Assembly: GCF_006345805.1 (NCBI RefSeq)
Contig: NC_042998.1
Location: 189,968,001-190,032,000 of the forward strand
Direction of reading: 5' to 3'
Length of the DNA: 64,000 nucleotides
DNA from: Octopus sinensis
Lineage: Eukaryota
In this document: positions 10,932-62,228 of the stretch, in pieces
Numbering within the stretch: position 1 is the stretch's first letter
Layout of the letters: every line of letters starts with the position of its first letter
Translations under genes and position numbers: made by a program
The notes under the pieces: generated by a model
What the model was told of the DNA's origin: nothing
The model's database searches: none
What the model saw: only the letters and a program-made list of their open reading frames with translations

Positions 10932-10967
<36 letters not shown>

Positions 10968-11133
10968 GGCATTTCGTCCGTACTTACGCTCTGAGTTCAA
11001 GTTCCACGAAGGTTGACTTTGCCTTTCACCCTTTCGGGGTCGATAAATTAAGTACCAGTGAAACACTTGGATTGATGTAATCGACTAGTCCCCTCCCACA
11101 AAATTTCATGCCTTTTGCTTTTGGTAGAAAGGA
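10968..11133 (+). mobile_element. SINE family B variant, 5'-truncated
   Basis: Core ctttcggggtcgataaattaagtaccag and tail gtagaaagga(tta)n. Confidence 0.82.
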
Positions 11134-11182: not shown

Positions 11183-12341
11183 GGTTAGTCCCATTTCCAT
11201 CGTAATTGTTCCCAATCTCCGATTTACTACAATATTCTTATTGGAAATAGAATTATCTTTTATTTGCAATATACTCCTTATGCTCTTTAATTTCGTTCAT
11301 TATTACTTCATTGTTTATATTTAATATTAATCAACAAAATTTATTAATCACTATAGTGTTGCCTCTAACGTCATTAAATCAACGCTGACAAACCTGCAGT
11401 AGAAACAAAATCCTCCTCTTCCTTCTCCTACCATTCATCATCATCAACGTCGTCATTGCCGTCACGATCGTCGTCATAGCTATCAACATTGTCGTCATTG
11501 CTATAGTCTGCCACCATTTAATACAACAATATTTTTCTTTGTTTTACCATTGGAAAAAGCCAAAATTAATGCAATAAGTGAATAAAAACAAAAAATTATT
11601 TATGAGTATTATTTGTTAGCAATTATCTCTCTAAATTGGGATTCATTTTCATTTTATTTAAAATTGTTTTGCGTATTTTATTTTTCAGATTCGACATAAA
11701 GCCTTTTGCAAAATTCTGTTTCGTTGCATTTCTTTTATGATTCTTCAATATTTTCACTCTTCTGTCACCTGAAAATTGTCGACTGCTTAAAAATACAGAA
11801 ATACCGAAGGAGTGAAAATTCTAAAATAATTCTTCCAGTGACGAACACAAGACAAAGAACAAGTCACTTTAAACATAAAGCAAACCACAAAGTAAAATAA
11901 ATTTAAAACAACAGCAGAGCAAAATTAATTAATTGATTGAATAATTAATGAAAGAAAATTTATTTTATTATATTTCTAAGATTTCGGGTTATTTTAAGAA
12001 AATGGGTTTGTTTCGTCCTTTCTGGTGTTTTATTTTATTGTTATGTAATTTTATTGTTGTATTGCATTGTATTTTTCTTTTTTTTCTTTCTTTCTTTCTC
12101 TCTCTCTCTCTCTTAGCAAATTCTGTCACTCGTTTGTGATTCTGGGAAATATAACACGAAGTAAGAATTCAAAAATTATCTTCTTTCTGGAAGTCAGGAT
12201 AAATTATTGATTCCTGTCGAGAACATGTTTGTACAAAGGAAAGACTGAAATCGTTTCATGTTCATACCTTACTCAAAGCTGTTTGCAGTATAAGAAGAAT
12301 CAACTGACTTCATATATATATATATTTTTATATACATACAT

Positions 12342-12408
<67 letters not shown>

Positions 12409-12418
12409 ATGTGTGTGT

Positions 12419-13026
12419 GATTGTATAAATTAGAAATATTGCAATACAATAGTATTATTTTCCTGTTAAATAAAGCACCGTAAAGGTAGAATTATAAATA
12501 CGAAATAGTGAAGCTTTACATAGCTTCGTATGGTTATCGACTGCTATTTCCAGCAAACATTGGTGCCTTGTTGTGCCACTATTTCCTATTCATAATTCTA
12601 CCTTTACAGTGCTTTATTTAGCTGGAAAATAATACTATTGTATTGCAATAATATTAATAATTTTTATATAAAACTTTTTCACTGATCTCGGTTCTGTTTA
12701 TGGCTAAGCGTGCAACCAATTATACTGGCATTGATGTAGCGGATATTTTAAATTTCGTATTCGGCGAACCTAGCTGAAGAAGACTAACCTGATTTACGAT
12801 AACAAACATATTCTGGGAAGTCGGAAACCCGAGTACTAGGTTATCCATTCTAGGCTGTCTATTTAACCGGCGTTCTTCCTAGAGGAAAGATGAATTTTTT
12901 TATGTTCTCTGCCAGTACATATCTTTGCCTGTATACATTCAGTGAAGCTTTGCATAATCTTGTACGGTTATCGACTACTATTTCCTGAAAACATTGGTGA
13001 TTTGTTGTGCCACTATTTCATATATA

Positions 13027-13100
<74 letters not shown>

Positions 13101-13704
13101 ATGTGTGTGTGATTGTATAAATTAGAAATATTGCAATACAATAGTATTATTTTCCTGTTAAATAAAGCACCGTAAAGGTAGAATTATAAATACGAAATAG
13201 TGAAGCTTTACATAGCTTCGTATGGTTATCGACTGCTATTTCCAGCAAACATTGGTGCCTTGTTGTGCCACTATTTCCTATTCATAATTCTACCTTTACA
13301 GTGCTTTATTTAGCTGGAAAATAATACTATTGTATTGCAATAATATTAATAATTTTTATATAAAACTTTTTCACTGATCTCGGTTCTGTTTATGGCTAAG
13401 CGTGCAACCAATTATACTGGCATTGATGTAGCGGATATTTTAAATTTCGTATTCGGCGAACCTAGCTGAAGAGACTAACCTGATTTACGATAACAAACAT
13501 ATTCTGGGAAGTCGGAAACCCGAGTACTAGGTTATCCATTCTAGGCTGTCTATTTAACCGGCGTTCTTCCTAGAGGAAAGATGAATTTTTTTATGTTCTC
13601 TGCCAGTACATATCTTTGCCTGTATACATTCAGTGAAGCTTTGCATAATCTTGTACGGTTATCGACTACTATTTCCTGAAAACATTGGTGATTTGTTGTG
13701 CCAC

Positions 13705-13711
<7 letters not shown>
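12419..13711. repeat. Tandem duplication of about 600 bp (12419-13020 and 13111-13711)
   Basis: Offset 692/691; only a 1-nt indel seen in the unique part; junctions in (TA)n(TG)n. Confidence 0.95.
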
Positions 13712-13751
<40 letters not shown>

Positions 13752-14436
13752 AACAGGTTCCTGAACTTGAGTAAATTATATTTCTAACATTAGCGTAATT
13801 CTACGCTACTATCCCCCACGATACAACAACACTTCACTAACGACCACTAGAATACTACACCATCAGCAATAACTTGGGAACAACCGAAACAAACTACAGA
13901 ATTATCAATAATTATAGTCGTGAACAGAAGTGCAGGAAAAAAAGTAGCCGTTAGTGCCGTAAACTTGTAATGTTTAATGCAATAGTGTTGTAATGTTTAA
14001 TTCTGTAAAGTTGTGGCGGTTAGTGATATAAAGTTGAAACTTTAATCCCGATTTATACCGTAACCAAATAGTATAAATCGTTTCTCTTCTATTTATACCT
14101 CTATTATCTTTTAATGCCTTCGTTATCAGTTTTCATATGAATATGTTTCATTATATTAATTCTTATCTAACACGATCTCTCCATTCGTTACTATATTTAG
14201 GCAGATTTTAATCCATGCATTTTTTTCTTTATCAAAATATGCCTTTATCTAAACCGCGACATTTTTCTTTCCCAATGTGTCATTATCTAAACCACTGCTT
14301 CACAAATCAAGGCGGCGAATTATATATACGTGTGTATGTGTGTGGTGCGGTGTATGCGCTTGTGTGTGTGTGGGTGTATGTTTATACATATATATATGAG
14401 CGTACCTCTGTATGTGCGTGCGTGTGAGTGTATGTA

Positions 14437-14471
<35 letters not shown>

Positions 14472-15059
14472 TTACACACCATAACTTTTAATGCATACTT
14501 TTGCTTTCCTGGGTAATATCAGAAAAAAAGCACACATACAATAATTAATATTCAACTTTTATCACATTTCTTGGTGCTTACATAAAATAATGAAACGAAT
14601 ACTAATTTTCAAAACAAAAATAATTATTACCTAAAGACATAATTAAATTTTTAAAAATTCCTCTTTAGTAACTCCTTCCATAACCATTGTCATTTACTCC
14701 CTCTCCTCTACATCGTACACTGCTTTCCTAGTTCTTTCCTTCTCCTGCGTGTGTGTGTGTGTAATCTTTTCCTCATTACCTGTCACCATGCCTAGTATGT
14801 GCACACATCCTACACCTTTTATGTTAACTCACTCTATCTCTTTTACTCCCTCCCTTCCCTCTCTATACGACGTAAAGCATGACTGGAGAAACCAACCAAC
14901 CAATATTTATATCGGTAATTATACGTACATACATACATACATACATACATACATACATACATAACATACATACATACATACATACATACATACATACATA
15001 CATACATACATACTACATACATACATACATACTACATACATACATACGTACATTCATAC

Positions 15060-15381
15060 TGTTATAATGTAAGATCCACGTCCACTTGTATGTTATTGTC
15101 GGCCCTGTAGTATTCTTGTCACCACTATTATTTTATGGCGTTATTTCGCGTTTTATCTTTGACTCGCCTATCGTGCTATCGCTGCTAGCTCCGCAAGATA
15201 ATGACTTCTACCTTCACGGTAACTCGAACTCGTATATGACACGTACTGACACTAACTCCAACTGAGAACTCGTACAACGACCATACTACTATTGACTTCC
15301 TACAACGACTGACTGTCTGAATTTATAGGGCCTCATACCACTTTGTCACATGGGAGGGAGAGTACCATTTTCACTACAACA
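15060..15381 (-). mobile_element. Solo LTR (BEL/Pao- or Gypsy-like)
   Basis: TGTTATAA...CTACAACA termini (TG..CA, TGTT/AACA inverted ends); 5-bp flanks catac/cttac (4/5 match); TATAAA on - strand. Confidence 0.62.
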
Positions 15382-16115
15382 CTTACAAACTTACATATAT
15401 ACATACATATATATATGTGTGTGTTTGTGTGTGCATGTATGTATTCGTATATATAATATATATATATATATATATAGTATTACACACCATAACTTTTAAT
15501 GCATACTTTTGCTTTCCTGGGTAATATCAGAAAAAAAGCACACATACAATAATTAATATTCAACTTTTATCACATTTCTTGGTGCTTACATAAAATAATG
15601 AAACGAATACTAATTTTCAAAACAAAAATAATTATTACCTAAAGACATAATTAAATTTTTAAAAATTCCTCTTTAGTAAACTCCTTCCATAACCATTGTC
15701 ATTTACTCCCTCTCCTCTACATCGTACACTGCTTTCCTAGTTCTTTCCTTCTCCTGCGTCTGTGTGTGTGTAATCTTTTCCTCATTACCTGTCACCATGC
15801 CTAGTATGTGCACACATCCTACACCTTTTATGTTAACTCACTCTATCTCTTTTACTCCCTCCCTTCCCTCTCTATACGACGTAAAGCATGACTGGAGAAA
15901 CCAACCAACCAATATTTATATCGGTAATTATACGTACATACATACATACATACATACATACATACATACATAATACATACATACATACATACATACATAC
16001 ATACATACATACATAATACATACATACATACATACATACATACATACATACATACATACATACATACATACATACATACGTACGTACATACATACATACA
16101 TACGTACATTCATAC

Positions 16116-16438
16116 TGTTATAATGTAAGATCCACGTCCACTTGTATGTTATTGTCGGCCCTGTAGTATTCTTGTCACCACTATTATTTTATGGCGTTAT
16201 TTCGCGTTTTATCTTTGACTCGCCTATCGTGCTATCGCTGCTAGCTCCGCAAGATAATGACTTCTACCTTCACGGTAACTCGAACTCGTATATGACACGT
16301 AACTGACACTAACTCCAACTGAGAACTCGTACAACGACCATACTACTATTGACTTCCTACAACGACTGACTGTCTGAATTTATAGGGCCTCATACCACTT
16401 TGTCACATGGGAGGGAGAGTACCATTTTCACTACAACA
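16116..16438 (-). mobile_element. Second copy of the solo LTR, produced by the local duplication
   Basis: Identical to 15060-15381 except a 1-nt insertion; same catac/cttac flanks. Confidence 0.62.
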
Positions 16439-16504
16439 CTTACAAACTTACATATATACATACATATATATATGTGTGTGTTTGTGTGTGCATGTATGTA
16501 TTCG

Positions 16505-16537
<33 letters not shown>

Positions 16538-24061: not shown

Positions 24062-24094
<33 letters not shown>

Positions 24095-24298
24095 CAATGA
24101 TAAATCTCAGAGCGAGTTATAAACAGTAGCGGTAACACATCGTGTTGAATATTTGCCATTTGAATATGGCTAACCCATAAGGGTGGATGCTACTGTAGTT
24201 TGTAGCCCCAGGAAGATATCTCCTCCAGTTGGCTATAGACACACTATCTGTGTCCTGTCAGTATTTGTGAAGGGGAGTCATCCTCCCCGTCTTCGACA

Positions 24299-24359
24299 CA
24301 TGATACACACGTACCCGAGTTTCAAGGTGTTTACCTTTCATCAGCGTGTGACAATCATG
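24299..24359 (-). ncRNA. Type I hammerhead ribozyme, copy 1
   Basis: Reverse complement reads CAUGAU-UGU-CACACG CUGAUGA AAGGU-AAAC-ACCUU GAAA C-UCGG-G UA^ CGUGUG-U-AUCAUG. All conserved core nucleotides and stems I-III are present. Confidence 0.92.
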
Positions 24360-24842
24360 GTTGTCGACGAGAAGTCAGATCCCTTCACAAATACATATAC
24401 TTTTTCCAGTGTCGATTTGACACTGATAATGAAAAAGTGAAATCAAACAATGATAAATCTCAGAGCGAGTTATAAACAGTAGCGGTAACACATCGTGTTG
24501 CATATTTGCCATTTGAATATGGCTAACCCATAAGGATGGATGCTATCATGTGTTGAAGACGGGGAGGATGACTCCCCTTCACAAATACTGACAGGACACA
24601 GATAGTGTGTCTATAGCCAACTGGAGGAGATATCTTCCTGGGGCTACAAACTACAGTAGCATCCACCCTTATGGGTTAGCCATATTCAAATGGCAAATAT
24701 GCAACACGATGTGTTACCGCTACTGTTTATAACTCGCTCTGAGATTTATCATTGTTTGATTTCACTTTTTCATTATCAGTGTCAAATCGACACTGGAAAA
24801 AGTATATGTATTTGTGAAGGGATCTGACTTCTCGTCGACAAC

Positions 24843-24903
24843 CATGATTGTCACACGCTGACGAAAGGTAAACACCTTGAAACTCGGGTACGTGTGTATC
24901 ATG
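24843..24903 (+). ncRNA. Type I hammerhead ribozyme, copy 2 (CUGACGA variant); predicted cleavage after 24890
   Basis: catgat tgt cacacg CTGACGA aaggt aaac acctt GAAA ctcggg TA cgtgtg t atcatg. Position 7 of CUGANGA is variable, so the T>C change is tolerated. Confidence 0.92.
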
Positions 24904-25195
24904 TGTTGAAGACGGGGAGGATGACTCCCCTTCACAAATACTGACAGGACACAGATAGTGTGTCTATAGCCAACTGGGGGAGATATCTTCCTGGGGCTAC
25001 AAACTACAGTAGCATCCACCCTTATGGGTTAGCCATATTCAAATGGCAAATATTCAACACGATGTGTTACCGCTACTGTTTATAACTCGCTCTGAGATTT
25101 ATCATTGTTTGATTTCACTTTTTCATTATCAGTGTCAAATCGACACTGGAAAAAGTATATGTATTTGTGAAGGGATCTGACTTCTCGTCGACAAC

Positions 25196-25256
25196 CATGA
25201 TTGTCACACGCTGATGAAAGGTAAACACCTTGAAACTCGGGTACGTGTGTATCATG
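25196..25256 (+). ncRNA. Type I hammerhead ribozyme, copy 3; predicted cleavage after 25243
   Basis: CTGATGA at 25211-25217, stem II AAGGT/ACCTT, GAAA, stem III A-U and C-G closing UCGG, GUA at 25241-25243, stem I CACACG/CGTGTG plus CATGAT/ATCATG. Confidence 0.93.
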
Positions 25257-25959
25257 TGTTGAAGACGGGGAGGATGACTCCCCTTCACAAATACTGACAG
25301 GACACAGATAGTGTGTCTATAGCCAACTGGAGGAGATATCTTCCTGGGGCTACAAACTACAGTAGCATCCACCCTTATGGGTTAGCCATATTCAAATGGC
25401 AAATATGCAACACTATATATATATATAAGCAAATAAGAAAATGGAGAGGATAATCAATTGACAAACATCAGCCTGTAAACATTCATTTGGATCTATTTAT
25501 TAATTAATCATATGTATTAGTAATGGAAAAAAATAAAATAAACAAATATACAAGGAAATAAATATATAAATAAAAATAGATAAATGAATAAGAATAAATG
25601 AGTGAAAAAATACTAAACTCTTACAGCTAGGGTTGTCCAATTTGCCAAGTTTTCCACATCATACCAGTAATATACAGGGATTGTACAAAGGTTGAGCAAA
25701 CATTGGACAGGGATTAGACAATGATTGAGGCCCAAAGCTTCATCAGAGAGAACATAATGTTAGGAATCTAACATGTGAGGGAGAATGGTAAAATAAGAAA
25801 ATAAAATAATAACATAATAGAAATAGTAAAGAATAGTAAAAACGTCAATTCCAAGGTGATATCTATAAACGTAAAAGGGCTGATAGAAAAAAAGAAAGAA
25901 TGAAAGAATAAAAGAATAGAGTCGTACAAGATTTAGATAAATATATACTTACATATAAG

Positions 25960-30197: not shown

Positions 30198-30270
30198 GGG
30201 CTTGTGACGCAATGGATAACGCGCCTGACTACGGATTAGGAAATTCCCGGTTCCAATCCTGGCAAACTCG
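30198..30270 (+). tRNA. tRNA-Arg(ACG)-like gene, probably pseudogene
   Basis: 73 nt closely resembling metazoan tRNA-Arg ACG; anticodon ACG at 30231-30233; T8 run at 30272-30279. Mismatches at C4.A69, A10.C25 and C51.T63, and T-loop TTCCAAT (C57). Confidence 0.8.
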
Positions 30271-31099: not shown

Positions 31100-31508
31100 A
31101 GATCTTTTTCGTTTGAACGGCAGTTTTTTCTAGCGGTGTCATATGAAATTGTCACCCATAATTATGACCCTAGTATCGATCTATTGCATTTCAATCTGTT
31201 TTAGGGTTAGGGTTAGGGATGGGTATTTTTTTTCTTCACAAATGTAAATAAACCCAATCTGTTTCTTAAACGAGGGACATATTCATACGGCACAGAATGT
31301 TTTCACCTCAATAGACATCATTGATTGGGTGAAATTGCAGAAATTGAAGAAAGAAAAAAACGATTATCTTACAAACTATAGAATCCTCTCAATAAAGCCA
31401 AAATAAAAAGATGTTTTATAAACACATTCTACCAGTTTACGAAGTTTAAAATTCTTTTAGTTACGTGGAAATTATTTTTAAAAACTGCCAGTCAAACCGA
31501 AAAGATCC
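31100..31508 (+). mobile_element. MITE family X copy 1 (TIR about 28 bp, 8-bp TSD, internal TTAGGG)
   Basis: agatctttttcgtttgaacggcagtttt ... aaaactgccagtcaaaccgaaaagatcc; flanks aatatccc/aatattcc (7/8). Confidence 0.88.
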
Positions 31509-32427
31509 AATATTCCCTGTAAAACATTTTAAAATTAAATTTTTTATACTGTTACGATTTTTAAATTTTCTTAGAGATTTGAAATAATACTATAAGGCAA
31601 CGAGTGGTAAAAACAGTAGAGCGACAGAGTGTTTAGTTATATCCCTTTTTGTCCTGAGTTCGAATCCCCAGTGGTCGACTTTTACCCTTTTGTTCTCGGA
31701 GCTCAATAAAATATGCACCAGCAGACCCCTGGAGTCGGCTCAATATGTTACTTTGGCTTCCAGCGATCATTCATTTGGTTTCATATCCTAAAACAGATCT
31801 TATATTTTTACCTAAGCCCGTGTTAGAACACATATTTTCCTTCGTATATGATCATTTTCAACGTTTTACATGAAGTTATTGATGTAAAACATTTATATAC
31901 AAATACAGATTTAGCTTGTGCAAACATCTTTAAATATTTCAATTAATCTGTAGCCTGGTTTAATACCTCACCTCGTGGTGTTTCGTATTTTTTTTTGTTT
32001 GCAGAATTCAACCAGGTGTAAGCATCTCTCATCTCAGGATAATTACTTCCCTTTCTTCCAACATTCCTAGATATACAAATGACGAGATGGGCATGGCTGA
32101 AACGCCTTTCATAATAAGCGTATTGGATCGGGACTGACTTAGGGACTAAAGAAACAATCAGTGCAATACTGATTTCTATCGTAGATACAAGACAATGCAT
32201 TTAATGGGAGAGAAATCAATTAAATCGACATCAGTATGTGACGGGTATTTTACTTTATCGATTATCGACCCCTGAACAATGAAAGGCGAAGTTGATATTT
32301 GAACTTGTAGCATAAAGGGTTATAACTAAACACCGTTGTACGTTTGGTTCGACAGTGTGAATTCTACTAATTAAATGTCGAAGATGTAAGATATTACAAT
32401 TTTTATAACTAGTACTAAGAAACATAT

Positions 32428-32845
32428 AGATCTTTTCGGTTTGAACGGCAGTTTTTCTAGCGGTGTCATATGAAATTGTCGCCCATAATTATGATCCTAG
32501 TATCGATCTATTGCATTTCAATCTGTCTTAGGGTTAGGGTTAGTTAGGGTTAGGGTGTGGGGAAGGGTATCTTTTTTTCTTCACAAATGTAAATAAACCC
32601 AATCTGTTTCTTAAACGAGGAACATATTCATACGGCACAGAATGTTTTCACCTCAATAGACGTCATTGATTGGTTGAAATTGAAGAAAAAAAAAACAACG
32701 AATATCTTATAAACTATAGGATTTTCTCAATAAAGCTATGAGAAAAAGATGTTTTATAAACACATTCTACCAGTATACGAAGTTTAAAAGTGTTTAGTTA
32801 CGTGGAAATTATTTTTAAAAGCTGCCGTTCAAACCGAAAATATAC
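32428..32845 (+). mobile_element. MITE family X copy 2
   Basis: Same TIRs and internal sequence as 31100-31508; right terminus and TSD are degenerate. Confidence 0.88.
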
Positions 32846-34148
32846 AAATGCATTTACAGTTGCTTAGGTAAACCCAAAGTACATTTCTGTAACTTTTAAG
32901 AAATATTGTAAATGACCTATTATGCAAAACGGAATGGCGTGTGAAAATTCACATAAAAATCTGCTCACTTGAACTTAAGATAATATAAAAGTAACAATCT
33001 TCTTGAATTTAAGTCCAAGACAATAACCATAAGAGAAGTATTTGCATTTGCTATACCTTAAATGTCGGTTATAAGAAAACAAAACACATAACGGTAAAAA
33101 TTAGCAAAATAAACAGAAGAGAACAATAGCAAATAAGAAACAAGATAGCATATAGAAGGGGAAAAAAAAACCTAAAAATGTCACCAAAGGGTGTGATTAA
33201 TCAAGAGATGAAGTGAGATTTCTTATCGATTACAATTCGTTGATGAGAACTTTTGTGAACACCTGCCATTTGACTGGCGGACTCTTATTCTTCATTTTCC
33301 TTTACACTGGCAACATTCTTTCCTATCGCCGACTTTTCCAACTCACTTCAACTGATAACAGTCTTAATCAAAGCTTACAATGCCGTCAAGCTATATAAAA
33401 CGAAACAATTTTAATATATCCTACATCTCTATGCCATTCATCTGTGGCATTATCACTTAGACGACTCCGTACCAGAACTGTACCCACCACTCATACCTCC
33501 ACTCGCTGTTTATCATTTCATGATTATTTAGTTACAATATGCCTCGCAAAAAAAGTAAATAAAATAAAATAAAATAAAACATGTCTTTTTTTTTATTTCT
33601 TTTTCCTTTCCTCTTCTTCATCGTATTTTCCATCTCACTGTAATTTGAAAATTTGTTTTTTCTTTTCTTCTCTTTTTTTTTTTTTGAATAGTAAAAATCT
33701 TTAGATTACCAAAATGTATTTAAATGAACATTGTAACTAAAGTGTTTTCTAACAACAATAGCAACAACAACAACAATAACAACAGCAGAATCTCATTCAT
33801 AAAGGATCTCTTTATTTAATGAAAGGTTGAACTAATTTTATTATCCTTCACCCTTCTTTCCGTTTATTTCGGTTTTTGTGACAGTTGCATCCGCCGCCAG
33901 TAAACTGGTCTTCGATTAGATTAGGTGAACTGCGTCAGTATCCATTATTTATATCGACTCACTTATTCATTTACTAATATAATGTTGGACAGTAGGGTAT
34001 TGGAAAGACAGAAGCGACCGAGCGCCAGTCATCATCATGCTTTGTTCTACTTAGTCGTATTCTCTTTTACATTCTGAGTTCAAATCCTACCAAAGTTAAC
34101 TTCCTCTTTCACCCCTTGCAATCAATGAATATAGGGAGTAATCTTCGA

Positions 34149-34581
34149 GGATCTTTTCGGTTTGAACGGCAGTTTTTAACATAATTTCTAGGTAACTAAA
34201 AAACTTTAAACTTCGTATACTGGTAGAATGTGTTTATAAAACATCTTTTTCTCTTGGCTTTATTGAGAAAATTCTATAGTTTGTCAGATATTTGTTGTTT
34301 TTTTTTCTTCAATTTCTGCAATTTCAACCAATCAGTGACGTCTATTGAGTTAAAAAGTATTTTGTGCCGTATGAATATGTCCCTCGTTTAAGAAACAGAT
34401 TGGGTTTATTTACATTTGTGAAGAAAAAAAGATACCCTTGCCCCACCCCTAACCCTAAGCCTAACTAACCCTAACCCTAAAAGAGATTGAAATGCAATAG
34501 ATCGATTCTAGGGTCATAATTATGGGTGACAATTTCATATGACACCGCTAGAAAAAACTGCCGTTCAAACCGAAAGGATCC
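34149..34581 (-). mobile_element. MITE family X copy 3 (inverted), perfect 8-bp TSD
   Basis: GGATCTTTTCGGTTTGAACGGCAG...CTGCCGTTCAAACCGAAAGGATCC; atcttcga at both 34141-34148 and 34582-34589. Confidence 0.92.
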
Positions 34582-34861
34582 ATCTTCGAAGCTCCACTAT
34601 ACAGTCTTGGTCAAAATAGGTGATCTGGTGCTATACATGGAAATTGATATTCTGCTGGAAATACCAGTTAAATTAGCAATACTCTGATCTTGTTTCTGAA
34701 TTTTAAAAAATACAGAAAAGTTAACGGTAATGGTTTTAACAGACAAGAAATAATTGATAACATGTCTCCTAAAATGAACATCTGCAAATACTTCAATAAA
34801 TAAATGTTATTTGTATTACAGATTGTCCCAAAAGAATATCCTCAGAATATTTTCTGTACAT

Positions 34862-35687: not shown

Positions 35688-37835
35688 TCGTATGTATGAG
35701 ACTGATTACTCGTATCATCACAGCTCTCTATATTCTGAGTTCAAATCCAGTTGAAGTCAATTTAACTTTTCGATATCAATGAATAAAATACCTTTCTAAG
35801 GTGGTTGACTTTTACTTGAAGAAGACTTGACCACTTCTCTTAACCTTAAAATTATTCTGTTCACTAGTCCAGAAAAATCTCAACACACTCTTTCACTCAA
35901 GGCCATCTCTAAGCATTTCCCTTTAAAACACAAAACACTTGCTTTTCTCAATCTTATTTTCCAAAATTCTTGACATTTGGATTTTATTTAATTTTCCTTA
36001 TTTTTTATTTAATCATTTAAAAAAAATTCCTAATGGTTTTTAAGACTTAAATTCATTGCTTCCATATATTGTTAAGCTATATGTTTCTTTTATTCATCCA
36101 ATTTTTTCTAAATCTTTTGTATCACATTTATCTTTATATATTAATTGTTGTATAATAGTCGTTCTTATTTAGCTCTGATTTTTTTTTTCGTTCATATTTT
36201 TTGTTATTTACCTAATTTTACTTCTCTCACCTGTGCGTTCCCCCATTAGGCATCCTCTAACGTTATTTCATTTGAAATTCTACTTCATGGAAGTTTGCCT
36301 AGCACATGATTTAACCCCCTCCTTCACTACTTTTTAATCCTCTCCCTCTCCTCATCTCTCTTCTCAGCCTCATCCCGTTCCTTCCCTCCCTGCACTTCTT
36401 CCATCTTGTTACTCCATATCTTTATTTAACTTCCAACTTATTACATATTTACAACTTAACATTCTCTTATGATACGAGAAGCATTTGTAGGCAGGTGAGT
36501 ATGTGAATATTTATGTGTATGTATGTATGTATACATGCATATATGCGTGTATGCAAATTTGCACACGAGTCCATATGTATATGTGTTTGTATGGAAGTGT
36601 TTGCCTCAGTATATATCCGAGTGTAAATGTGTCTGTATGTCTATGTATGTATATAAGTAAGTCTGTGGATGTGCTTGTATATGTGTGCATCTATATTTAT
36701 GTTTACGTATGCATGCTTACATATTTATATGTATGTGTCCCAGTATTTGCCTATATCCGTGTTTGTGTCGGTATATACGTACATATGTTTGCGTCTGCAT
36801 AGTTGCGTTTGTAATCTAATGACACCGGTTCGAGTTTCAGTAAATATATTTTCTGTATTTCTTCTTTCGTTTCTTCACTTTTTTTCACAGCAAAAATTAT
36901 CTTAATTATACCTTCTGACATAAATCATCGTTAATTTTGATTAGATGATTGTTCATTACATTCAATATCACAATCTACGAGTACATTAATTATAATTTTT
37001 AATGTTTCATTTAACTTAATATTCACACGGATAATGCATATTGTAATTTCTGTGATTTAAACTTCTCCATACGCCTCTAAGTTAAACCACAACCTACACT
37101 ATCTTCATACCTCTCTGACCATCAATAGACTACTGAAGAGAATCAAAATATTTTTTGATGAATCTTAAACAGAAGGAGATATATTTCTTCTACCAATGTT
37201 AATTTTTTTTAACCTCACTGTGTTGTTCAGCACATCGGTCCGTATATGTCCACCGTTTTCTGTTTTTATTTTTAATTACAGTTTTTATGGTTTCTTTACA
37301 TATCAGACGAGAAAAGTTGACGCTCAGTTCTTTATTTCTTGGAAGAAAACAAGTTGTGAGTGCTCTCCCATATATCAGATCATACACGCATGTACACACA
37401 TGTATATATACACAGACACGGTTATGTTTTTATTGCGTTGCCCATATTTTATTGGTCTGGAAGGGATAAAAAGGCAAAATTGAACTTAGTGAAATCTGAG
37501 CTCAGAAGGAAAAGAGGCTGAACACTTACGGCAAGGCATTTGCTTGGCCGAATTTTAAGGAAGTTAGATATATTCTAAGGAAGGTGAAATAAAAGTACCG
37601 CTGCGACAAGTTTTACGAGTGTGAAATGAAATGGCTACTAGTAGGAATTCGAACCACATGAAAATTAATTTATATGAAGTTTCTACCTTCTTACACGTTC
37701 ACCGAAAATCAAGTTAAACTTTATGTGCGAAAGAAGGTGCCGGTGCTGATCAGAATTAGAAACAAGCATGGTTTTAATTCGATTCAGATATCGATCTTTA
37801 AGTTTACCATAATGGTATACTAATTGAGGAAGAGG

Positions 37836-38075
37836 TAAGGCGGTAAGCTGACAGAATCGTTAGCACGCCGGCCGAAATGCTTAGCGGTATTTCGTCTGCC
37901 GTTACGTTCTGAGTTCAAATTACGCCGAGGTCGACTTTGCCTTTCATCCTTTCGGGGTCGATTAAATAAGTACCAGTTACGCACTGGGGTCGATATAATC
38001 GACTTAATCCGTTTGTCTGTCCTTGTTTGCCCTCTCTATGTTTTAGCCCCTTGTGGGTAGTAAAGAAATAGGTAT
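37836..38075 (+). mobile_element. SINE family B (Meta-domain-like core), full length with long TSD
   Basis: Core gcctttcatcctttcggggtcgat..aagtaccag; 22-bp direct repeat ggtatactaattgaggaagagg at 37814-37835 and 38071-38092. Confidence 0.92.
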
Positions 38076-43341: not shown

Positions 43342-44319
43342 ATTTTAAGTGGTGTCCTCCAGGGAACTGTTCTGGAGGCATTACTGTTCATAATAGCCTC
43401 AGACATGCCTAGGGTCACTAGGACAACTACTGTCACTAAGTATGTTGATGATACAAAATTATCACTGGCAATAAAAAATTGCCAGTGAATTCGATTTACA
43501 AATGGGCTAAAATAAACAACATGCAGTTTAATGCTGGAAAATATCCATCATTGCACTATCAACTCATGAATACACTACAGCCTGCATATACAGGACCCGA
43601 AGGCACTACAATCCCAGAGTCACAGGCAGTGAAAGACTCGGGGATCAGTATGTGCTAATGAAGCATTATTTTATATATGCACATTACCAAGATGGTAGCA
43701 AAGTGCAGACAGCTGGCAGGATGGATACTGAGGTCCTCCAAGACACGAGATCAAGAAACTATGTTGAGCCTATGAAGAAATTTTTATTCTCTGCCGCCTG
43801 GACTACTGCTCCCAGTTATGTTCACCACATAGTGCCAAACTAACATCGGAGCTTGAAGCAGTCCAACGCCACATTGAAACAGAGCAACGGATGAGCTACA
43901 GGGATAGGCGGAGAAAACTCCAACTTTACTCCCTGGAGCGGCAGTGCGAGAGATATACAAGAATCGACATCTGGAAAACTCTAGAAGGTCCAGTACCTAA
44001 TTTTGGCCTTGAGTGTTATACAAATGCCAGAACAGCCCACCATTGTGTTGTACCAAAGCTACCATCTCCTCCATCTAAACTCAGGACCAGGTACTGCAAT
44101 AGTCTGGTTTTCAAAGGTTTACAGTTTTTCAATACCCTACCGCAAAATTTTAGAAATCTGCATAAGATGGAAGTAGATATCTTCAAAAAGGAACTAAACA
44201 TCCACCTTTCAACAATACTGTATGAGCCAACAGCCCATTATGAGATGCAGATGAGGGCAGCGGAATCAAACTCCCTTATACACCAAACGGGCCAACAGCT
44301 GGGACAAACGCACATATAA
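43342..44319 (+). mobile_element. 5'-truncated CR1/L2-type LINE ORF2 relic (RT C-terminal half and downstream domain), stops/frameshifts
   Basis: In-frame SGVLQGTVLEALLF...KYVDDTK (YVDD at 43441-43452), then WAKINNMQFNAGK, VKDSGI, DYCSQL, LEAVQR. ORF 43891-44319 YRDRRRKLQLYSLERQCERY...IWKTLEGPVPN matches the CR1-clade C-terminal pattern. Confidence 0.88.
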
Positions 44320-47800: not shown

Positions 47801-49574
47801 TTTTGAATAAGGCCTTCCACCTAAGTTTTTGTCTACTAAATTTCACTTACAAGGGCTGGGTCGGTTCGAGGTTATAATAAATGAAAGTTGCCTAAGATGC
47901 CATTTAGCGAGAAACAACCTAAGGACCCGTTATTCGCAAACACACTTCTTAAGGAACATATATAAGCACATATATAAATAAGTGTATACATATATGTAGA
48001 TGAACGGATGTGAAATATATCAATTTATATTCACGTTCATATAGGTAAACATTCACATGTAATTCAGATAAATTCTAAGGTACTAAATAATGTACATAGA
48101 AAAATTCTGAATTAAATTAAATTTGCTAGTTGCTGGGGAAAGAAAAACACACTAATGACAGTTGTTAGTGAGTCTCAGAAAGAATGATATATAATTTCAA
48201 GAAATTAGAATTGATTTTACAGAAAATTGAATTTTCATGTTTAGGAGGAAAATCTGATCTTTGTTAACCGACAACGGGACGGATACTGGTGTGTTTCTGT
48301 CTAAGAATAGTCTTGTCAAGCGGAAAAAAGAGTTATAGAGAGTTTGAACAGAACATTTTGCATAATTGTAAAAAATTGAGACAAGGCAAATAGTTCAAGT
48401 GGGCTAAAAGCATTGATTTAAGTATTTCAGGTAGGTGATGACATATTGAATAATACGAGCAAAAGATTGTAAATGAAATTAGATTTGGTTTTCTTTATCC
48501 AATGTGGAAGCATCTTTCAATTCATTGGGAAGGCTTTGCATGCGTTATCTAGCACATCACCACTTTCCTGAATCGTCTAATTTCATACAATTAGCACACC
48601 TGAGAAAATTTTCCAAATAATCTATAAATAGGGAACAGTGGTATATTGGGATAGATTCATTCAACTATGCATTCTTCGCAAAAAAAAAAAATCACTTTTG
48701 AGTGCGATTTAGACATCAACATCAATTTTTCTTTTTTTTTTTTGGATTGATTAGGATTTATTGTGATAACAATAATAGTTCTAACATTGATAGAGTGCCA
48801 CAAATTTTATAGGATGATTTGGTCGACTTAATGGAGCCCAGTATTTGTCTGGTAGATTTGGTTTCGGTGGGATTTTTATTCACAATATAAAACATCATAA
48901 CTAATACTATGGGCTATTTTGACCAACTTCTGCGACTCCACCACTTCGCAGCCTTATTTATTTATTTATTTCGAAATTTATTTTAAACGACGGCGTTAAA
49001 CAAGAGAGCCACGACAGATGTAGGACATACATTTAATACCCTATAATAGAATGTACTAGATTGAGGGGAAAATATATGAATAATTTTGCTGTTCAATTTC
49101 GTGGTTACTTCCATGAATTGACAATATTAAGTATTTTGTGTTCTACTTAGGGTTTTTTTTTCAAGACTCTGATTGGAATATAAAGTGCTTCCATCCTCCT
49201 CTTTGTCCAGGTATTACCAAGATGTAGGTTTCTTTCCTATTACGCATATCCCTAAAATTACTGGCATTTGTTTAATCATTTTAGTATGACAAAAGATTAA
49301 GTTCACTAAGTTAGAATTTAAAAGTGACACCACAAGTTAATACCGTAGCATCTGCTACAATTCGAATATTCAAACCGTATTACTAAGAGTTTGAAATTCA
49401 CTCTCTACTTTCTAAGTTTTAATCCCACTGAGATGAATTTATTCTTTCTTTTCACAAGAATATATAAATACATGTACGAGGCTTGCTTTTGGATTAACTC
49501 TTAAGTGATTATAACTTGATTAAATGTATTGCTTTGAAGCAATGCTATGCATGAATATTCTTCCAAACATACAG

Positions 49575-49754
49575 GTAGCAACTGGAGAAATCGTTAGCAC
49601 AACGGATGAAATGCTTAGTGGCATTTCATCTGTCTTCACGTTCTGAGTTCAAATTCCACCGGAGTCGACAAAATACGTACGATCAAAACGCAGGGGTATC
49701 TAATCTCAACTTAGCCCCCAAACACCCGCTGGCCTTGTGCCAAAATTTGAAACC
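49575..49754 (+). mobile_element. SINE family B fragment
   Basis: aatcgttagcac...gaaatgcttag...ttctgagttcaaattcc. Confidence 0.75.
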
Positions 49755-54905: not shown

Positions 54906-54940
54906 CATTATCATTATTAATATTATTATTATCATTATCA

Positions 54941-55312
54941 AGGCAGCGAGCTGGCAAAATCGTTAGAAAGCCGGACAAAATGCTTAGCGACATTTTGTCC
55001 GTCTTCTCGTTCTGAGTTCAAATTCCGCTGAGGTTAACTTTCCCTTTCATCCTTTCAGGGTCGATGACATAAGTACCAGTTGAGCATTGGGGGTCAATGT
55101 AATCTACTAGCTTCCACTCCTAAAATGTCAGGCCTTGTTCTTATAGTAGAAAGGATTATTATTATCGTTATATTCCAAATTCCGCCGAGGTCGACTTTGC
55201 CTTTCATTCGTTTGGGGTCGATAAATTAAGTACCAGTGAAACACTGGGTTCCATCTAATCGACTAGTCCTTCCTCAAAAATTTCAGGCTAAGTGACTTCT
55301 GTAGAAAAGATT
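54941..55312 (+). mobile_element. SINE family B variant, full copy (54941-55163) plus truncated copy (55176-55312)
   Basis: Same head and core as 37836; alternative 3' end ...gtagaaagga(tta)n. Confidence 0.85.
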
Positions 55313-59019: not shown

Positions 59020-59338
59020 ACATACACTTAATTAGCATATATCTCTTACAAGTAGTTCAACACGACCTGCTAGAAATAGCAGCAAATTCATATCCTTTTA
59101 TTCTAAAATGTAACACATCGTTTAATGTAATCCTAAATCCCCATAAAAACATAATATAAACGTATGTCAGCTTCGTCAGCATCAACCTTTGTTTAAACAG
59201 CAATAACAATAATAGTGCTTTTGTCAACTACAGCAATAGTACTGCGACAAACAAGGGGAACTCTTTAACATTGCTTGACAGCAACCAGATATAAACCTAC
59301 TGTCTTAAAAGCGAAGAGAAACATACTAGATCTAGATA

Positions 59339-59754
59339 CCTATTTCTTTACTACCCACAAGGGGCTATACATAGAGGGGACAAACAAGGACAGGCAAACG
59401 GATTAAGTCGATTGCGTCGACCCCAGTGCGTAACTGGTACTTAATTCATCGACCCCGAAAGGATGAAAGGCAAAGTCGACCTCGGCGGAATTTGAACTCA
59501 CAACGTAACGGCAGACGAAATACATATTTCTTTACTACCTACAAGGGGCTAAACATAGAGGGAACAAACAAGGACAGACAACGGGATTAAGTTGATTACA
59601 TCGACCCCAGTGCGTAACTGGTACTTAATTTATCGACCCCGAAAGGATGAAAGGCAAAGTCGACCTTGGTGGAATTTGAACTCAGAACGTAACGGCAGAC
59701 GAAATACGGTTACGCATTTCGCCCGGCGTGCTAACGTTTCTGCCAGATCGCCGC
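59339..59754 (-). mobile_element. SINE family B head-to-tail dimer (full monomer 59524-59754 plus 5'-truncated monomer 59339-59523)
   Basis: Two copies of the family B body offset by about 185 bp. Confidence 0.9.
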
Positions 59755-60919
59755 ATTATCTAGATCTTTCTAGATCTAGATACCGGTAATAAAAAAAAAA
59801 GGGACGGAACAGTTACATATGAAACATCTTTGATCATTGATCTACTCAATGAGGACTACCTAAGAGTTAAACAACTACAACACAAAAACAAAATGCACAA
59901 TAATAACCACAACAACGATAGAAACAATAACAATTAACTCTACAGTTTGATGATTTATATATTTATAAATTGTCTGTCCGAAGTTTATTGACGAATTATT
60001 CTCTAAAGACCCATTGAAATTAGAGAAAGAATGTGCGATCACATTTTGTTTTGTTTATCTTTCCACCACGACCAGCACCACAATCAACATCAGCCCGACT
60101 TGTTAACATTGTCTCTCTAACCAATATCAATTATACTACTGACATTAATATCTGCATCGTTATAAAATACGACAAAAGACAGGAAATCGGAAGTTTACAC
60201 ACTGTCATGATTTGGAGTGGCTTGTAGAGAGAAGCATCCGATCTATATTAGATATATTTCCGGAATGAACGCCTAAACACCGTCGAAGGGAGATATGGCT
60301 TGATGATCTATTGAACAATGGCCTGTTCAATGTTGAAATATCGACAGTGGCGAACAATGGTGGAAGGAAACGTAAATATTGCAAGCGAAAAGAATAACAC
60401 ACAGAAACAGTGTTGAGTTAAAAACCTGTCGTCCATGTTTGTGCGCGTGTGAAGAGCGCGTGTTTGCTTGTGCATGAGAGCGGTGTCTGCGCGTGTGTGT
60501 CTATATGTTGAGATGCATATATATGTGCACTCTATACGTGTGCTTGAGTCTATGCGTGTTTGTGCTTGTTTGTGCGTGCGCCTGTATGATAAACCTGTAT
60601 ATGCGTGCTACCGTATGGCACATGTATTTTCTCTGTTTCAGACAAATTTGCTTCTACATCGTCTCATACGTTAACTATTTTTACGAGCCTCACATAGTCA
60701 CGAGCCCCTTTAATGAGAAATTATCAATAAAAGAAAAATACTGATAACGGATAAAAAAAGAAAACTTTTAGAACTTTTTACGTATAATGCCTCCAGACGA
60801 ACTGTACGGCATAAACGTTTGAAAATTATACATACATGCAAACACACGTACGCGCACCCCGTACACACACATGCATACACATACACATATTTGTATATAT
60901 GTCTACAAAGACTAAGAAA

Positions 60920-61298: not shown

Positions 61299-62228
61299 GC
61301 GCTCACGCACACACACACACACACACAGAATATGAATGAGAGAGAGAGAGATGGATGAATACTATAAACAGATTCTCCAAATGAATTTTTAAATATGTCC
61401 TCACTCTGTCTTCAACTAAATGTTGGCATAGTTATAAAGATATTAGACACACTTAACTGTTTAATTAGAAGAGAGAAATTGATAAGATCTCTTCCCTATT
61501 TCTACCTTCATCGAAAATTAAGAACTTGTAGGAAGAAACGAGGGACGGAATTCATTTCATTCCTTAAATTTAATACACAGTGATATCAATCCTTTCTTTA
61601 TCTGAACAGACGGTCATTTTCTGTTATTCCGGCGTTTGTAATGATCATTAAGGAAATTCAATGACAATTATTTGCTCAAGTAGGACGTCACCTTTCTTCT
61701 ACTGTCTTTTCTCGTGGGCAACACTACATGTTGCTCAACAGAAGTAGAATTATAAATAATTTGAAATTGCATAAAGAAATTATAACCAAGAAAAATTTTT
61801 CAGATTTACTTTTAAAAGGTAAAGCTACCAACTGTTAAACTGATACGTAATGGTTATTTTACGTACCAGGACGTTCAGAGATCATTCATTCTAAAGTCTG
61901 GTAGAAGCACTTAAACTTTCCTTCGCTGATGAGTTTTAATGATACTGAAATATGTTCGGAGTTTTTACCATACTGTAAAAGTCAGGTTCATTCCACACAG
62001 CGTTCTGTTTTTAATTAATTTAAATTCCAGGAGTGTTTCTTTTAATTTTTTTTTACACAGAATAGATATTATGTTAATGATTTGTCACTATGAATTTTAA
62101 TAAATTAATTTTTCTTACCTCACTAAATTCAGTATATTAGTATCCAGTTTGCTATTGATTTTCTTATACTGACAGTTTTTAACTAGGCAGTATGATTGAT
62201 TTAGTGACTCCAGTATAAGATTAGTGTT

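What the first reader, a model, noticed from the sequence alone, without database searches (positions are those of the whole stretch)
24093..25413. 353-bp tandem repeat with intact hammerhead ribozymes: a candidate self-cleaving, circRNA-producing retrozyme
Seen: three HHR-containing units with a complete type I hammerhead (stem I CACACG/CGUGUG extended by CAUGAU/AUCAUG across a UGU/U bulge; CUGAUGA or CUGACGA; stem II AAGGU/ACCUU; GAAA; 2-bp stem III; GUA site). Two + strand copies are exactly 353 nt apart, so cleavage after 24890 and 25243 would release a precise monomer (24891-25243). Copies are almost identical, implying a young insertion. Established: short tandem repeats with type I HHRs (non-LTR retrozymes; newt satellite 2, Schistosoma Sm-alpha) yield monomeric and circular RNAs and are thought to be mobilised by Penelope-like RTs. 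Inference: this is an active family of that kind in a cephalopod-like genome. I cannot check whether this family is already described.
Basis: partly seen in the sequence, partly recalled or inferred. Interest (0 to 1): 0.93.

Follow-up and report, generated by a model that had tools for sequence, protein, structure and literature searches.

The report
Hammerhead-ribozyme tandem repeat (animal retrozyme)
A 1.3-kb block of 353-bp repeats, each carrying an intact-looking self-cleaving hammerhead ribozyme, is a new example of the already described animal "retrozyme" mobile elements, and its head-to-head layout inside a (TA)n tract looks like a Penelope-type retrotransposon insertion.

Summary
Window 24093-25413 consists of 353-nt units that are about 99% identical. 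There are three complete type I hammerhead motifs, with predicted cleavage after 24890 and 25243 on the + strand and after 24312 on the - strand. An explicit descriptor finds only these three sites in 64 kb (about 0.02 expected by chance). A covariance model built only from validated coral, mussel and axolotl retrozyme ribozymes ranks them as its top three hits (24.0, 24.0 and 20.2 bits). Rfam reports no hammerhead, but it also missed a textbook-core control, so that negative carries little weight. The unit meets every sequence-level criterion for a non-LTR retrozyme: 353 nt, 41.9% GC, non-coding, and a very stable predicted circle (z about -8.6). A 1.28-unit inverted, 5'-truncated copy abuts a 2.46-unit direct array, and both 3' ends run into one (TA)n microsatellite. 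That is the published insertion signature of Penelope-like elements. Self-cleavage, circular RNA, copy number, family activity and the cephalopod origin could not be tested, because the public collections searched lack this organism. One deviation is an A10.1-U11.1 pair where G-C is usual. Verdict: a new member of a known kind, of modest interest.

The parts
24065..24092 (.). Left half of the target (TA)n microsatellite, about 14 units
   Evidence: Sequence; TRF row 24065-24093. The boundary with the repeat is ambiguous by 1-2 nt.
24093..24545 (-). Inverted, 5'-truncated array of 1.28 units. Read on the - strand it runs unit 120-353, then 1-219, and its 3' end abuts the left (TA)n.
   Evidence: BLAST of the unit; inverted repeat I1, 453 nt, 99% complementary; register map.
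24306..24350 (-). Hammerhead copy M (CUGAUGA); predicted cleavage after the - strand base at 24312
   Evidence: Descriptor; model R1 at 24.0 bits, E about 1e-4.
24544..24545 (.). Head-to-head junction where the 5' ends of the two arrays meet, with a 2-nt TA overlap shared by both alignments
   Evidence: The BLAST and the repeat finder coordinates overlap by 2 nt; sequence.
24544..25413 (+). Direct array of 2.46 units (unit 7-353, 1-353, 1-170). Its 3' end abuts the right (TA)n, and its 5' end lies 6 nt downstream of a ribozyme cleavage site.
   Evidence: TRF period 353, 99% matches; register map.
24852..24896 (+). Hammerhead copy P1 (CUGACGA, with C at the free core position N7); predicted cleavage after 24890
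   Evidence: Descriptor; model R1 at 20.2 bits.
25205..25249 (+). Hammerhead copy P2 (CUGAUGA); predicted cleavage after 25243
   Evidence: Descriptor; model R1 at 24.0 bits.
24891..25243 (+). Predicted 353-nt monomer released by double cleavage, which is the candidate circular RNA
   Evidence: Cleavage-site spacing. Circular MFE -127.9 kcal/mol against -81.2 +/- 5.4 for shuffles, z about -8.6.
25161..25294 (+). Long hairpin arm: helix I continues into a 41-bp interrupted helix (unit 271-320 paired with 1-51), with the ribozyme at its tip
   Evidence: Pair list and arm z = -7.6. The same hairpin caused the spurious weak MIR9481 hits.
25414..25427 (.). Right half of the target (TA)n microsatellite, 7 units
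   Evidence: Sequence.

Best explanation
This is one insertion of a non-autonomous, non-coding retroelement of the animal non-LTR retrozyme kind. Its 353-nt unit carries a canonical metazoan type I hammerhead at the tip of a long hairpin. Proposed cycle (inferred from the family, not shown here): a multimeric + polarity transcript is cut after GUA in each unit. Cutting probably happens during transcription or through a two-ribozyme (double hammerhead) fold in which the self-complementary ACUCGGGU boxes of neighbouring units form an 8-bp helix III. The released 353-nt RNA, with 5'-OH and 2',3'-cyclic phosphate ends, refolds into a very stable branched rod that sequesters the catalytic core, and a host RtcB-type tRNA ligase circularises it. 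A Penelope-like element's reverse transcriptase and GIY-YIG endonuclease then copy circular or multimeric RNA into DNA at a nicked (TA)n tract, which yields tandem units with no fixed ends. At this locus both target strands seem to have primed synthesis (twin-priming-like). The result is two arrays whose 3' ends face outward into (TA)n and whose truncated 5' ends were joined in the middle at a 2-nt microhomology.
For: Ribozyme: a descriptor hit at exactly three sites against 0.02 expected. A model trained only on validated coral, mussel and axolotl retrozyme hammerheads puts these sites at ranks 1-3 of 128 kb searched, at 24.0, 24.0 and 20.2 bits, full length, with no non-canonical pairs. Control loci sharing the same 19 core bases score 13 bits or less, apart from one real-looking hammerhead at 18. 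The architecture fits the published definition: helix I of 6 bp, helix II of 4-5 bp, helix III of 1-2 bp with a small palindromic loop (PMC4209133). It closely parallels the active mussel ribozyme, whose helix III box is ACGCGCGU where this one is ACUCGGGU. The only inter-copy change in the core is at N7, the one free position. Retrozyme features: two consecutive complete units, which is the operational criterion of the 2026 preprint; unit 353 nt and GC 41.9% against published ranges of about 170-400 nt and under 45-50%; short ORFs only, with no homologues or Pfam domains; circular-fold z about -8.6. Dimer option: the double hammerhead is the MFE of a 501-nt dimer-spanning transcript, P about 0.61. 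Integration: an inverted 5'-truncated copy next to a partial tandem, and a (TA)n target, are described as typical of Penelope-like elements (PMC8557442). (TA)n covers only 3-4% of the window.
Against: No RNA or cleavage data exist. A10.1-U11.1 replaces the G10.1-C11.1 pair described as highly conserved. Rfam's hammerhead models give no hit even at E <= 10, although they also fail on a textbook-core control. Equilibrium folding never forms the 2-bp helix III. It prefers CUGA/UCGG pairing (P 0.57-0.97), and the double hammerhead disappears when the whole 873-nt array is folded. No second genomic copy was seen, so mobility as a family and covariation are untested. No Penelope-like RT, endonuclease or minimal hammerhead lies in the window. 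The PLE link rests on one locus, and (TA)n tracts are common here. Target-site duplications cannot be read inside a microsatellite.
Confidence: 0.72

Rival explanations
1. A local satellite with a relic ribozyme. On this reading the block arose by DNA-level events only: unequal crossing-over for the tandem part, and a fold-back or template-switch inverted duplication at a break in the fragile (TA)n tract. The hammerhead is inherited but no longer used, and nothing is currently transcribed, cleaved or mobilised.
For: The inverted arm differs from the matching direct segment by 4 of 453 nt, about the same as direct units differ from one another, so a DNA duplication of a pre-existing array fits equally well. 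The T164 variant is shared by one direct unit and one inverted unit. There is no other copy in 64 kb. The inactive fold is thermodynamically preferred, and the A10.1-U11.1 pair is atypical.
Against: All three cores are intact and the only core change is at the neutral N7 position. Both outer ends fall in the same (TA)n tract while the 5' ends meet centrally, which target-primed synthesis explains directly and DNA rearrangement explains only with extra assumptions. The units are about 99% identical, so the locus is young. The extreme fold stability (z about -8.6) is hard to explain without selection on an RNA.
Confidence: 0.17
2. A fragment of an autonomous Penelope-like element. On this reading the repeats are pseudo-LTR sequence from a larger, mostly deleted or 5'-truncated PLE insertion, and not a separate non-autonomous family.
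For: PLE pseudo-LTRs carry type I hammerheads, PLE insertions are heavily 5'-truncated, they form tandem and inverted structures, and they favour microsatellites. The 2026 preprint finds retrozymes to be sister to PLE pseudo-LTRs.
Against: There is no RT or GIY-YIG coding sequence in or next to the block, and no Pfam hit in any ORF of the window. The period is a clean 353 nt across 2.46 and 1.28 units with nothing else between. The ribozyme is the canonical form with a 6-bp helix I, internal loop and capped helix III, not the minimal PLE variant.
Confidence: 0.08
3. A chance or non-catalytic look-alike inside a hairpin-forming repeat of another kind, or an assembly artefact that created the palindromic layout.
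For: Rfam gives no hammerhead hit. The PLE paper notes that such structures trouble assemblers.
Against: The chance expectation is 0.02 or less per window. The independent model gives E about 1e-4 at all three sites. The Rfam negative is explained by the failed control. The arrays differ at several positions, which a simple assembly collapse or duplication would not produce.
Confidence: 0.03

Closest known systems
Mytilus galloprovincialis non-LTR retrozyme (clone Mg353; Cervera & de la Pena 2020, PMC7229834)
   Same: A mollusc element with tandem repeats of about 350-390 bp (the cloned unit is also 353 nt), low GC and no coding capacity. Its type I hammerhead has a 6-bp helix I and a 2-bp helix III closed by a 4-nt loop, forming an 8-nt self-complementary box (ACGCGCGU there, ACUCGGGU here). 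Its loops also lack most of the archetypal loop 1 / loop 2 contact nucleotides.
   Different: There is no detectable sequence homology. The mussel ribozyme has G10.1-C11.1 and a GUC site, whereas this one has A10.1-U11.1 and GUA. The predicted circle here is far more stable relative to shuffles (z -8.6 against -1.1). The mussel element is shown to cleave (kobs about 0.1 per min) and to accumulate as circular RNA, and nothing of that kind is shown here.
Newt satellite 2 and axolotl retrozymes (Ax330, Ax353)
   Same: Tandem units of 330-353 nt, a weak helix III, efficient cleavage only as dimeric ribozymes, and a GUA site in Ax353. Here a double-hammerhead fold is the predicted MFE of a dimer-spanning transcript.
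   Different: Those are vertebrate elements with a higher GC content (51-58% in the cloned units) and up to about 120,000 copies. They are unrelated in sequence to this unit.
Hammerheads in the pseudo-LTRs of Penelope-like elements (PLEs)
   Same: Type I topology, a palindromic helix III and proposed dimeric action. The insertion architecture also matches: a partial tandem, an adjacent inverted 5'-truncated copy and a (TA)n or other microsatellite target.
   Different: PLE ribozymes in animals are minimal variants, and the elements are 3-4 kb long and encode RT plus a GIY-YIG endonuclease. Here the ribozyme is canonical and the unit is 353 nt and non-coding.
Schistosoma Sm-alpha SINE-like repeat
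   Same: A repeat of about 330 nt with a type I hammerhead, found in tandem and dispersed copies (my own knowledge of the family; referred to).
   Different: Sm-alpha is described as carrying a pol III promoter. Here only a box A-like 10/11 match is present (24967-24977), and there is no box B within 2 mismatches.

Membership tests
Hammerhead ribozyme, canonical metazoan type I | Invariant core CUGANGA / GAAA / A15.1-U16.1 / H17 (not G), with helix I open | tested here: met
   All three copies have it; N7 is U or C and H17 is A.
Hammerhead ribozyme, canonical metazoan type I | Helix I of about 6 bp up to an internal loop; helix II of about 4 bp with a capping loop; helix III of 1-2 bp with a small palindromic loop (PMC4209133) | tested here: met
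   Helix I is 6 bp followed by a UGU/U loop. Helix II is 5 bp with loop AAAC. Helix III is 2 bp with loop UCGG, and ACUCGGGU is self-complementary if G.U pairs are counted.
Hammerhead ribozyme, canonical metazoan type I | G10.1-C11.1 pair at the base of helix II | tested here: not met
   The pair is A10.1-U11.1 in all copies, whereas G-C is described as highly conserved. It keeps the purine-pyrimidine orientation. Its effect on rate is unknown.
Hammerhead ribozyme, canonical metazoan type I | Match to a curated covariance model (Rfam Hammerhead_1 / HH9 and related models) | tested here: inconclusive
   There is no hit at gathering score or at E <= 10, even on 91 nt. A control with a textbook core (L003) also gets no Hammerhead_1 hit and only 16.3 bits against Hammerhead_3.
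Hammerhead ribozyme, canonical metazoan type I | Match to a profile of experimentally active retrozyme hammerheads | tested here: met
   Model R1 (coral, mussel and axolotl only) gives 24.0, 24.0 and 20.2 bits, the top three hits of the window with filters off. Specificity control.
Hammerhead ribozyme, canonical metazoan type I | Site-specific self-cleavage | not testable with these tools
   This needs in vitro transcription of monomer and dimer templates.
Hammerhead ribozyme, canonical metazoan type I | Covariation in helices I and II across family members | not testable with these tools
   No other copies could be retrieved. A control shows that the organism is absent from the collections.
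Animal non-LTR retrozyme | Tandem repeat with at least two consecutive units that each carry a complete type I hammerhead | tested here: met
   Units P1 and P2; criterion as stated.
Animal non-LTR retrozyme | Unit of about 150-450 nt and low GC (under 45-50%) | tested here: met
   The unit is 353 nt with 41.9% GC; published ranges.
Animal non-LTR retrozyme | No LTR, PBS or PPT, and no protein-coding capacity | tested here: met
   The longest ORFs are 85, 45 and 41 aa, with no homologues and no Pfam domain. The block contains nothing but the unit.
Animal non-LTR retrozyme | Monomer predicted to form a stable, highly self-paired circle | tested here: met
   MFE -127.9 kcal/mol, z about -8.6 to -9.4, 63% of bases paired. 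This is stronger than the validated references, which give z -1.1 to -3.2.
Animal non-LTR retrozyme | Expressed as unit-length linear and circular RNA | not testable with these tools
   No transcriptome of the source organism is available here.
Animal non-LTR retrozyme | Multi-copy dispersed family that co-occurs with hammerhead-bearing Penelope-like elements | not testable with these tools
   There is one locus only in the window, and no PLE in the window.
Autonomous Penelope-like element | An ORF encoding a PLE reverse transcriptase with or without a GIY-YIG endonuclease | tested here: not met
   There is no such ORF or domain in the block or the window.
SINE with internal pol III promoter (Sm-alpha type) | Box A and box B at tRNA-like spacing | tested here: not met
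   There is a box A-like 10/11 match at unit 77-87 but no box B within 2 mismatches. ARAGORN finds no tRNA in the block.

The most novel reading that the evidence does not exclude
This is a previously undescribed, lineage-specific retrozyme family (possibly cephalopod). This locus preserves a nearly undecayed twin-primed integration product inside a (TA)n tract, which would be direct structural evidence that retrozyme RNA is integrated by the Penelope-like RT and GIY-YIG machinery. The review literature still treats that link as unresolved at the level of sequence motifs. In addition, read-through across the head-to-head arrays would give about 450 bp of near-perfect double-stranded RNA, so such insertions could act as built-in triggers of small-RNA silencing of their own family. 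The unusually stable rod (z about -8.6) with a 41-bp helix clamping the ribozyme may be a stronger on/off switch than in known retrozymes.
Probability: 0.2. Interest if true: 0.55.

Novelty: new member of a known kind. Interest (0 to 1): 0.33.

Why it matters
Retrozymes are a recently recognised route to abundant small circular RNAs in animals, and their mobilising machinery is still inferred rather than demonstrated. A young, almost undecayed insertion shows both 3' ends in one (TA)n tract and an inverted 5'-truncated partner. It is therefore a useful natural specimen for the proposed Penelope-like, target-primed integration of circular or multimeric RNA. If the family is confirmed in cephalopods, it would extend the known host range. 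It would also add a compact 353-nt self-processing unit with a very stable scaffold that could be used for circular RNA expression. Beyond that, it is an ordinary member of a class known since 2020, with roots in the newt satellite 2 work of 1987.

Tried and rejected
(1) Rfam at gathering score on the whole window, at E <= 10 on 1.7 kb, and on 91 nt gave no hammerhead. I rejected this as evidence against the motif after a control hammerhead with a textbook core (L003) was also missed.

(2) The weak MIR9481, SNORA29 and other Rfam hits were rejected. They lie far below gathering scores and simply reflect the long hairpin around the ribozyme.

(3) I used the unit's small ORFs as handles to pull other copies, with three exact-match look-ups and one homology search. 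All were empty. A control with a LINE-like ORF from the same window found only one 67%-identical protein on a 707-nt metagenome contig. The collections therefore lack this organism, and the emptiness says nothing about copy number.

(4) Exact 26-nt core scans of the metagenome, viral and prokaryote-genome collections gave 0 hits. A degenerate pattern gave 25 loci at about the chance rate, none related to this unit.

(5) Literature string searches for the ribozyme sequence and for the window's SINE-like repeat found nothing relevant. No held paper links hammerheads or retrozymes with cephalopods.

(6) A four-sequence training alignment was dropped because MAFFT shifted axolotl Ax330 out of register. 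I used three sequences instead of editing published data.

(7) I first read the double hammerhead as 'the' fold of multimers. I withdrew that after folding the whole array, where its probability is about 0.

(8) The strand-asymmetry test for RNA-level selection was inconclusive. Both polarities are strongly structured (z -9.4 and -6.6) and have similar G.U counts.

(9) A pol III promoter was rejected, because only a box A-like match is present.

(10) A scan for minimal PLE-type hammerheads and a Pfam scan of non-repetitive ORFs found no nearby autonomous element.
Full report
**What is there**

Window 24093-25413 is built entirely from one 353-nt unit. TRF reports a period of 353, 2.5 copies and 99% matches at 24544-25413. 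BLAST of the unit against the window and the repeat finder show another 453 nt of the same unit in reverse orientation at 24093-24545.

I number the unit from the predicted cleavage site, so position 1 is C24891. In that register:
- The + array runs unit 7-353, 1-353, 1-170 (2.46 units).
- The - array, read on its own strand, runs 120-353, 1-219 (1.28 units).
- The two 5' ends meet at 24544/24545 and share a TA dinucleotide.
- The two 3' ends face outward, and each runs straight into a (TA)n tract: about 14 units on the left (24065-24092) and 7 on the right (25414-25427).

Only five unit positions vary among the five full or partial copies: 17, 88, 129, 164 and 325. There is no further copy anywhere in the 64 kb.

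**Is the hammerhead real?**

It comprises helix I CACACG/CGUGUG, continued after a UGU/U internal loop by CAUGAU/AUCAUG; core CUGAUGA (CUGACGA in one copy); helix II AAGGU/ACCUU with loop AAAC; GAAA; helix III AC/GU closed by UCGG; and cleavage triplet GUA followed by C1.1, which pairs with G2.1.

- **Descriptor.** An explicit descriptor run on both strands finds these three sites and nothing else. Simulated sequences of the same composition give 0.02 hits per window with relaxed limits and none with limits matching this motif.
- **Rfam.** Rfam gives no hammerhead hit at gathering score, at E <= 10 on 1.7 kb, or on the 91-nt motif alone. I tested what that negative is worth. A pattern scan turned up an unrelated metagenomic locus (L003) with a textbook type I core (G10.1-C11.1, 4-bp helix II, the same helix III). 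Rfam gave it no Hammerhead_1 hit and only 16.3 bits against Hammerhead_3, whose gathering score is 48.5. As run here, the Rfam models are therefore insensitive to short-helix-III type I hammerheads.
- **Independent model.** I took the sequences of experimentally active retrozymes from the supplement of Cervera & de la Pena 2020. From the coral, mussel and axolotl Ax353 ribozymes only, I built a covariance model. With filters off over the whole window, its three best hits are exactly the three sites: 24.0, 24.0 and 20.2 bits, E about 1e-4 to 2e-3, full length, no non-canonical pairs.
- **Specificity control.** Twenty-five control loci contain the same 19 core bases by construction. Only L003 reaches 18.1 bits, and the rest score 13.1 or less.

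The motif is therefore a genuine member of the hammerhead pattern class at sequence and structure level. The one departure is A10.1-U11.1, where G10.1-C11.1 is described as highly conserved. The only inter-copy substitution in the core falls on N7, the single unconstrained core position. That is one event, so it is weak evidence.

**Is it a retrozyme?**

The literature defines animal non-LTR retrozymes as short tandem repeats (about 150-450 bp) of low GC. They have a type I hammerhead in each unit, lack LTR, PBS and PPT, have no coding capacity, and are expressed as highly self-paired circular RNAs of about 170-400 nt (PMC7229834; PMC7761336). A 2026 preprint detects them with TRF plus a descriptor and calls them active when at least two consecutive units have complete ribozymes.

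This locus passes each sequence-level test:
- The unit is 353 nt with 41.9% GC, against 34.1% for the window.
- Two consecutive units carry complete ribozymes.
- The only ORFs are 85, 45 and 41 aa, with no homologue among 5.8 billion clustered proteins and no Pfam domain.
- The predicted circle has an MFE of -127.9 kcal/mol, against -81 +/- 5 for dinucleotide shuffles (z -8.6 to -9.4).

Benchmarked the same way, the validated coral, mussel and axolotl units give z between -1.1 and -3.2, so this unit is unusually strongly structured. Both parts contribute. The ribozyme arm is a 41-bp interrupted helix continuing helix I (z -7.6), and the central branched domain gives z -4.9.

The unit shows no sequence similarity to the reference elements. 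That is expected, since these families are reported to be species-specific.

**How it probably works**

*Shown here:* the anatomy and the predicted folds. *Inferred from the family:* transcription, cleavage, ligation and retrotransposition.

- Helix III is only 2 bp. In equilibrium folding it never forms, and CUGA instead pairs with UCGG (P 0.57-0.97), most strongly in the processed monomer at P about 0.96.
- The box ACUCGGGU is self-complementary. In a 501-nt transcript spanning two ribozymes, the unconstrained MFE is a classic double hammerhead with an 8-bp helix III and both cores open (P about 0.61).
- That result depends on context. It vanishes when the full 873-nt array is folded at equilibrium, so it indicates capacity and not behaviour.
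- This matches the published logic for metazoan type I hammerheads: poor cleavage as monomers, activity as dimers in tandem transcripts, and protection of the monomeric circle (axolotl data).
- By analogy with published assays, circularisation would be done by an RtcB-type ligase rather than by the ribozyme.

**Integration footprint**

[quoted passage not shown] The locus has exactly this layout.

(TA)n covers only 3-4% of the window, so a random hit is unlikely but not negligible. Having both 3' ends outward, the 5' ends joined centrally and a 2-nt microhomology matches twin priming as known from LINE-1 inversions (my own knowledge). The absence of fixed unit ends (3' ends at unit 170 and 219) fits a circular or multimeric template.

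The + array starts 6 nt from a cleavage site, which may hint at a ribozyme-cut 5' end. With one case in two the chance probability is a few per cent, so I give it little weight. No PLE coding sequence, minimal hammerhead or RT domain lies in the window, so any helper acts in trans.

**Rivals**

- **DNA-level origin.** Unequal crossing-over plus a fold-back duplication at a fragile (TA)n cannot be excluded. The inverted arm differs from the matching direct segment by 4 of 453 nt, like the direct units differ among themselves, and one variant (T164) is shared across orientations.
- **Truncated PLE pseudo-LTR.** This is unlikely given the clean 353-nt period, the canonical (not minimal) ribozyme and the absence of coding remnants.
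- **Chance or artefact.** This is effectively excluded for the motif. The palindromic layout should still be confirmed with long reads.

**What could not be tested**

- **Other copies, and hence covariation, copy number and family activity.** Exact and degenerate DNA scans of three collections and four protein-handle look-ups found nothing related. A control ORF from the same window shows that the organism is essentially absent from those collections.
- **The cephalopod attribution.** It rests on my recollection that the window's abundant SINE-like repeat resembles an octopus SINE. String searches did not confirm it.
- **Prior description.** No held paper reports hammerheads or retrozymes in cephalopods. 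Repbase and Dfam could not be consulted, so I cannot say whether the family is already catalogued.

**Verdict**

The element is a new member of a known kind. Its most useful feature is the young, PLE-like head-to-head insertion in a (TA)n tract.

Noticed in passing
window 61920-61962 (+): A solitary, imperfect hammerhead-like motif is the fourth hit of the retrozyme-trained model (17.6 bits, E about 0.01). CUGAUGA and GAAA are present, but helix II has a U.U mismatch, there is an extra U before G12, and helix III is 1 bp. It is not repeated and has no partner nearby. It is probably chance or a decayed relic.
   Followed up: partly
L003 1606-1646 (+) (JGI metagenome contig Ga0126342_10093962): An unrelated, textbook-core type I hammerhead (CUGAUGA-GUGC-GUGA-GCAC-GAAAC-UCGG-GUA) that is not in a tandem repeat. 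Rfam release 15, as run here, gives it no Hammerhead_1 hit and only 16.3 bits against Hammerhead_3. This suggests that genome scans relying on Rfam under-detect short-helix-III type I hammerheads.
   Followed up: partly
window 31100-31510, 32426-32847 (+) and 34149-34583 (-): Three copies (87-89% identical) of a 415-bp element with terminal inverted repeats of about 28 bp (GATCTTTTCGGTTTGAACGGCAGTTTTT...) and an internal (TTAGGG)n tract of variable length. It is a MITE-like family that carries a telomere-type microsatellite.
   Followed up: partly
window 59336-59760; also 37833-38075, 10963-11086, 54940-55264, 49573-49669: An abundant SINE-like interspersed repeat, here also as a 184-bp tandem dimer (92% identical). 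From memory it resembles an octopus SINE. This is the only hint to the organism, and it was not confirmed by any tool.
   Followed up: partly
window 12326-13741 and 14385-16530: Two local tandem duplications with long periods (about 690 bp at 99% identity and about 1007 bp at 94%), both bounded by AT or ATAC microsatellites. This suggests microsatellite-mediated unequal exchange in this region.
   Followed up: no
window 30198-30270 (+): A tRNA-Arg(ACG) gene or tRNA-derived sequence (Rfam tRNA 35.6 bits; also called by ARAGORN). It is the only Rfam gathering-level hit in the window.
   Followed up: no
window 43891-44319 (+): A 142-aa ORF that I read by eye as the C-terminal tail of a LINE ORF2. 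It has no Pfam hit. Its only relative in the 5.8-billion-protein collection is 67% identical, on a 707-nt ENA metagenome contig (ERZ23499275).
   Followed up: partly
window 24967-24977 and 25320-25330 (+): A pol III box A-like sequence, TAGCCAACTGG (10 of 11 matches to TRGCNNAGTGG), lies inside each unit, with no recognisable box B. It is probably not a promoter, but it is worth checking if transcription start sites become available.
   Followed up: partly
window 24093-25109: The head-to-head arrays form a 453-nt, 99% complementary inverted repeat with a 111-nt spacer. A read-through transcript would fold into a long double-stranded RNA, a potential small-RNA precursor.
   Followed up: no
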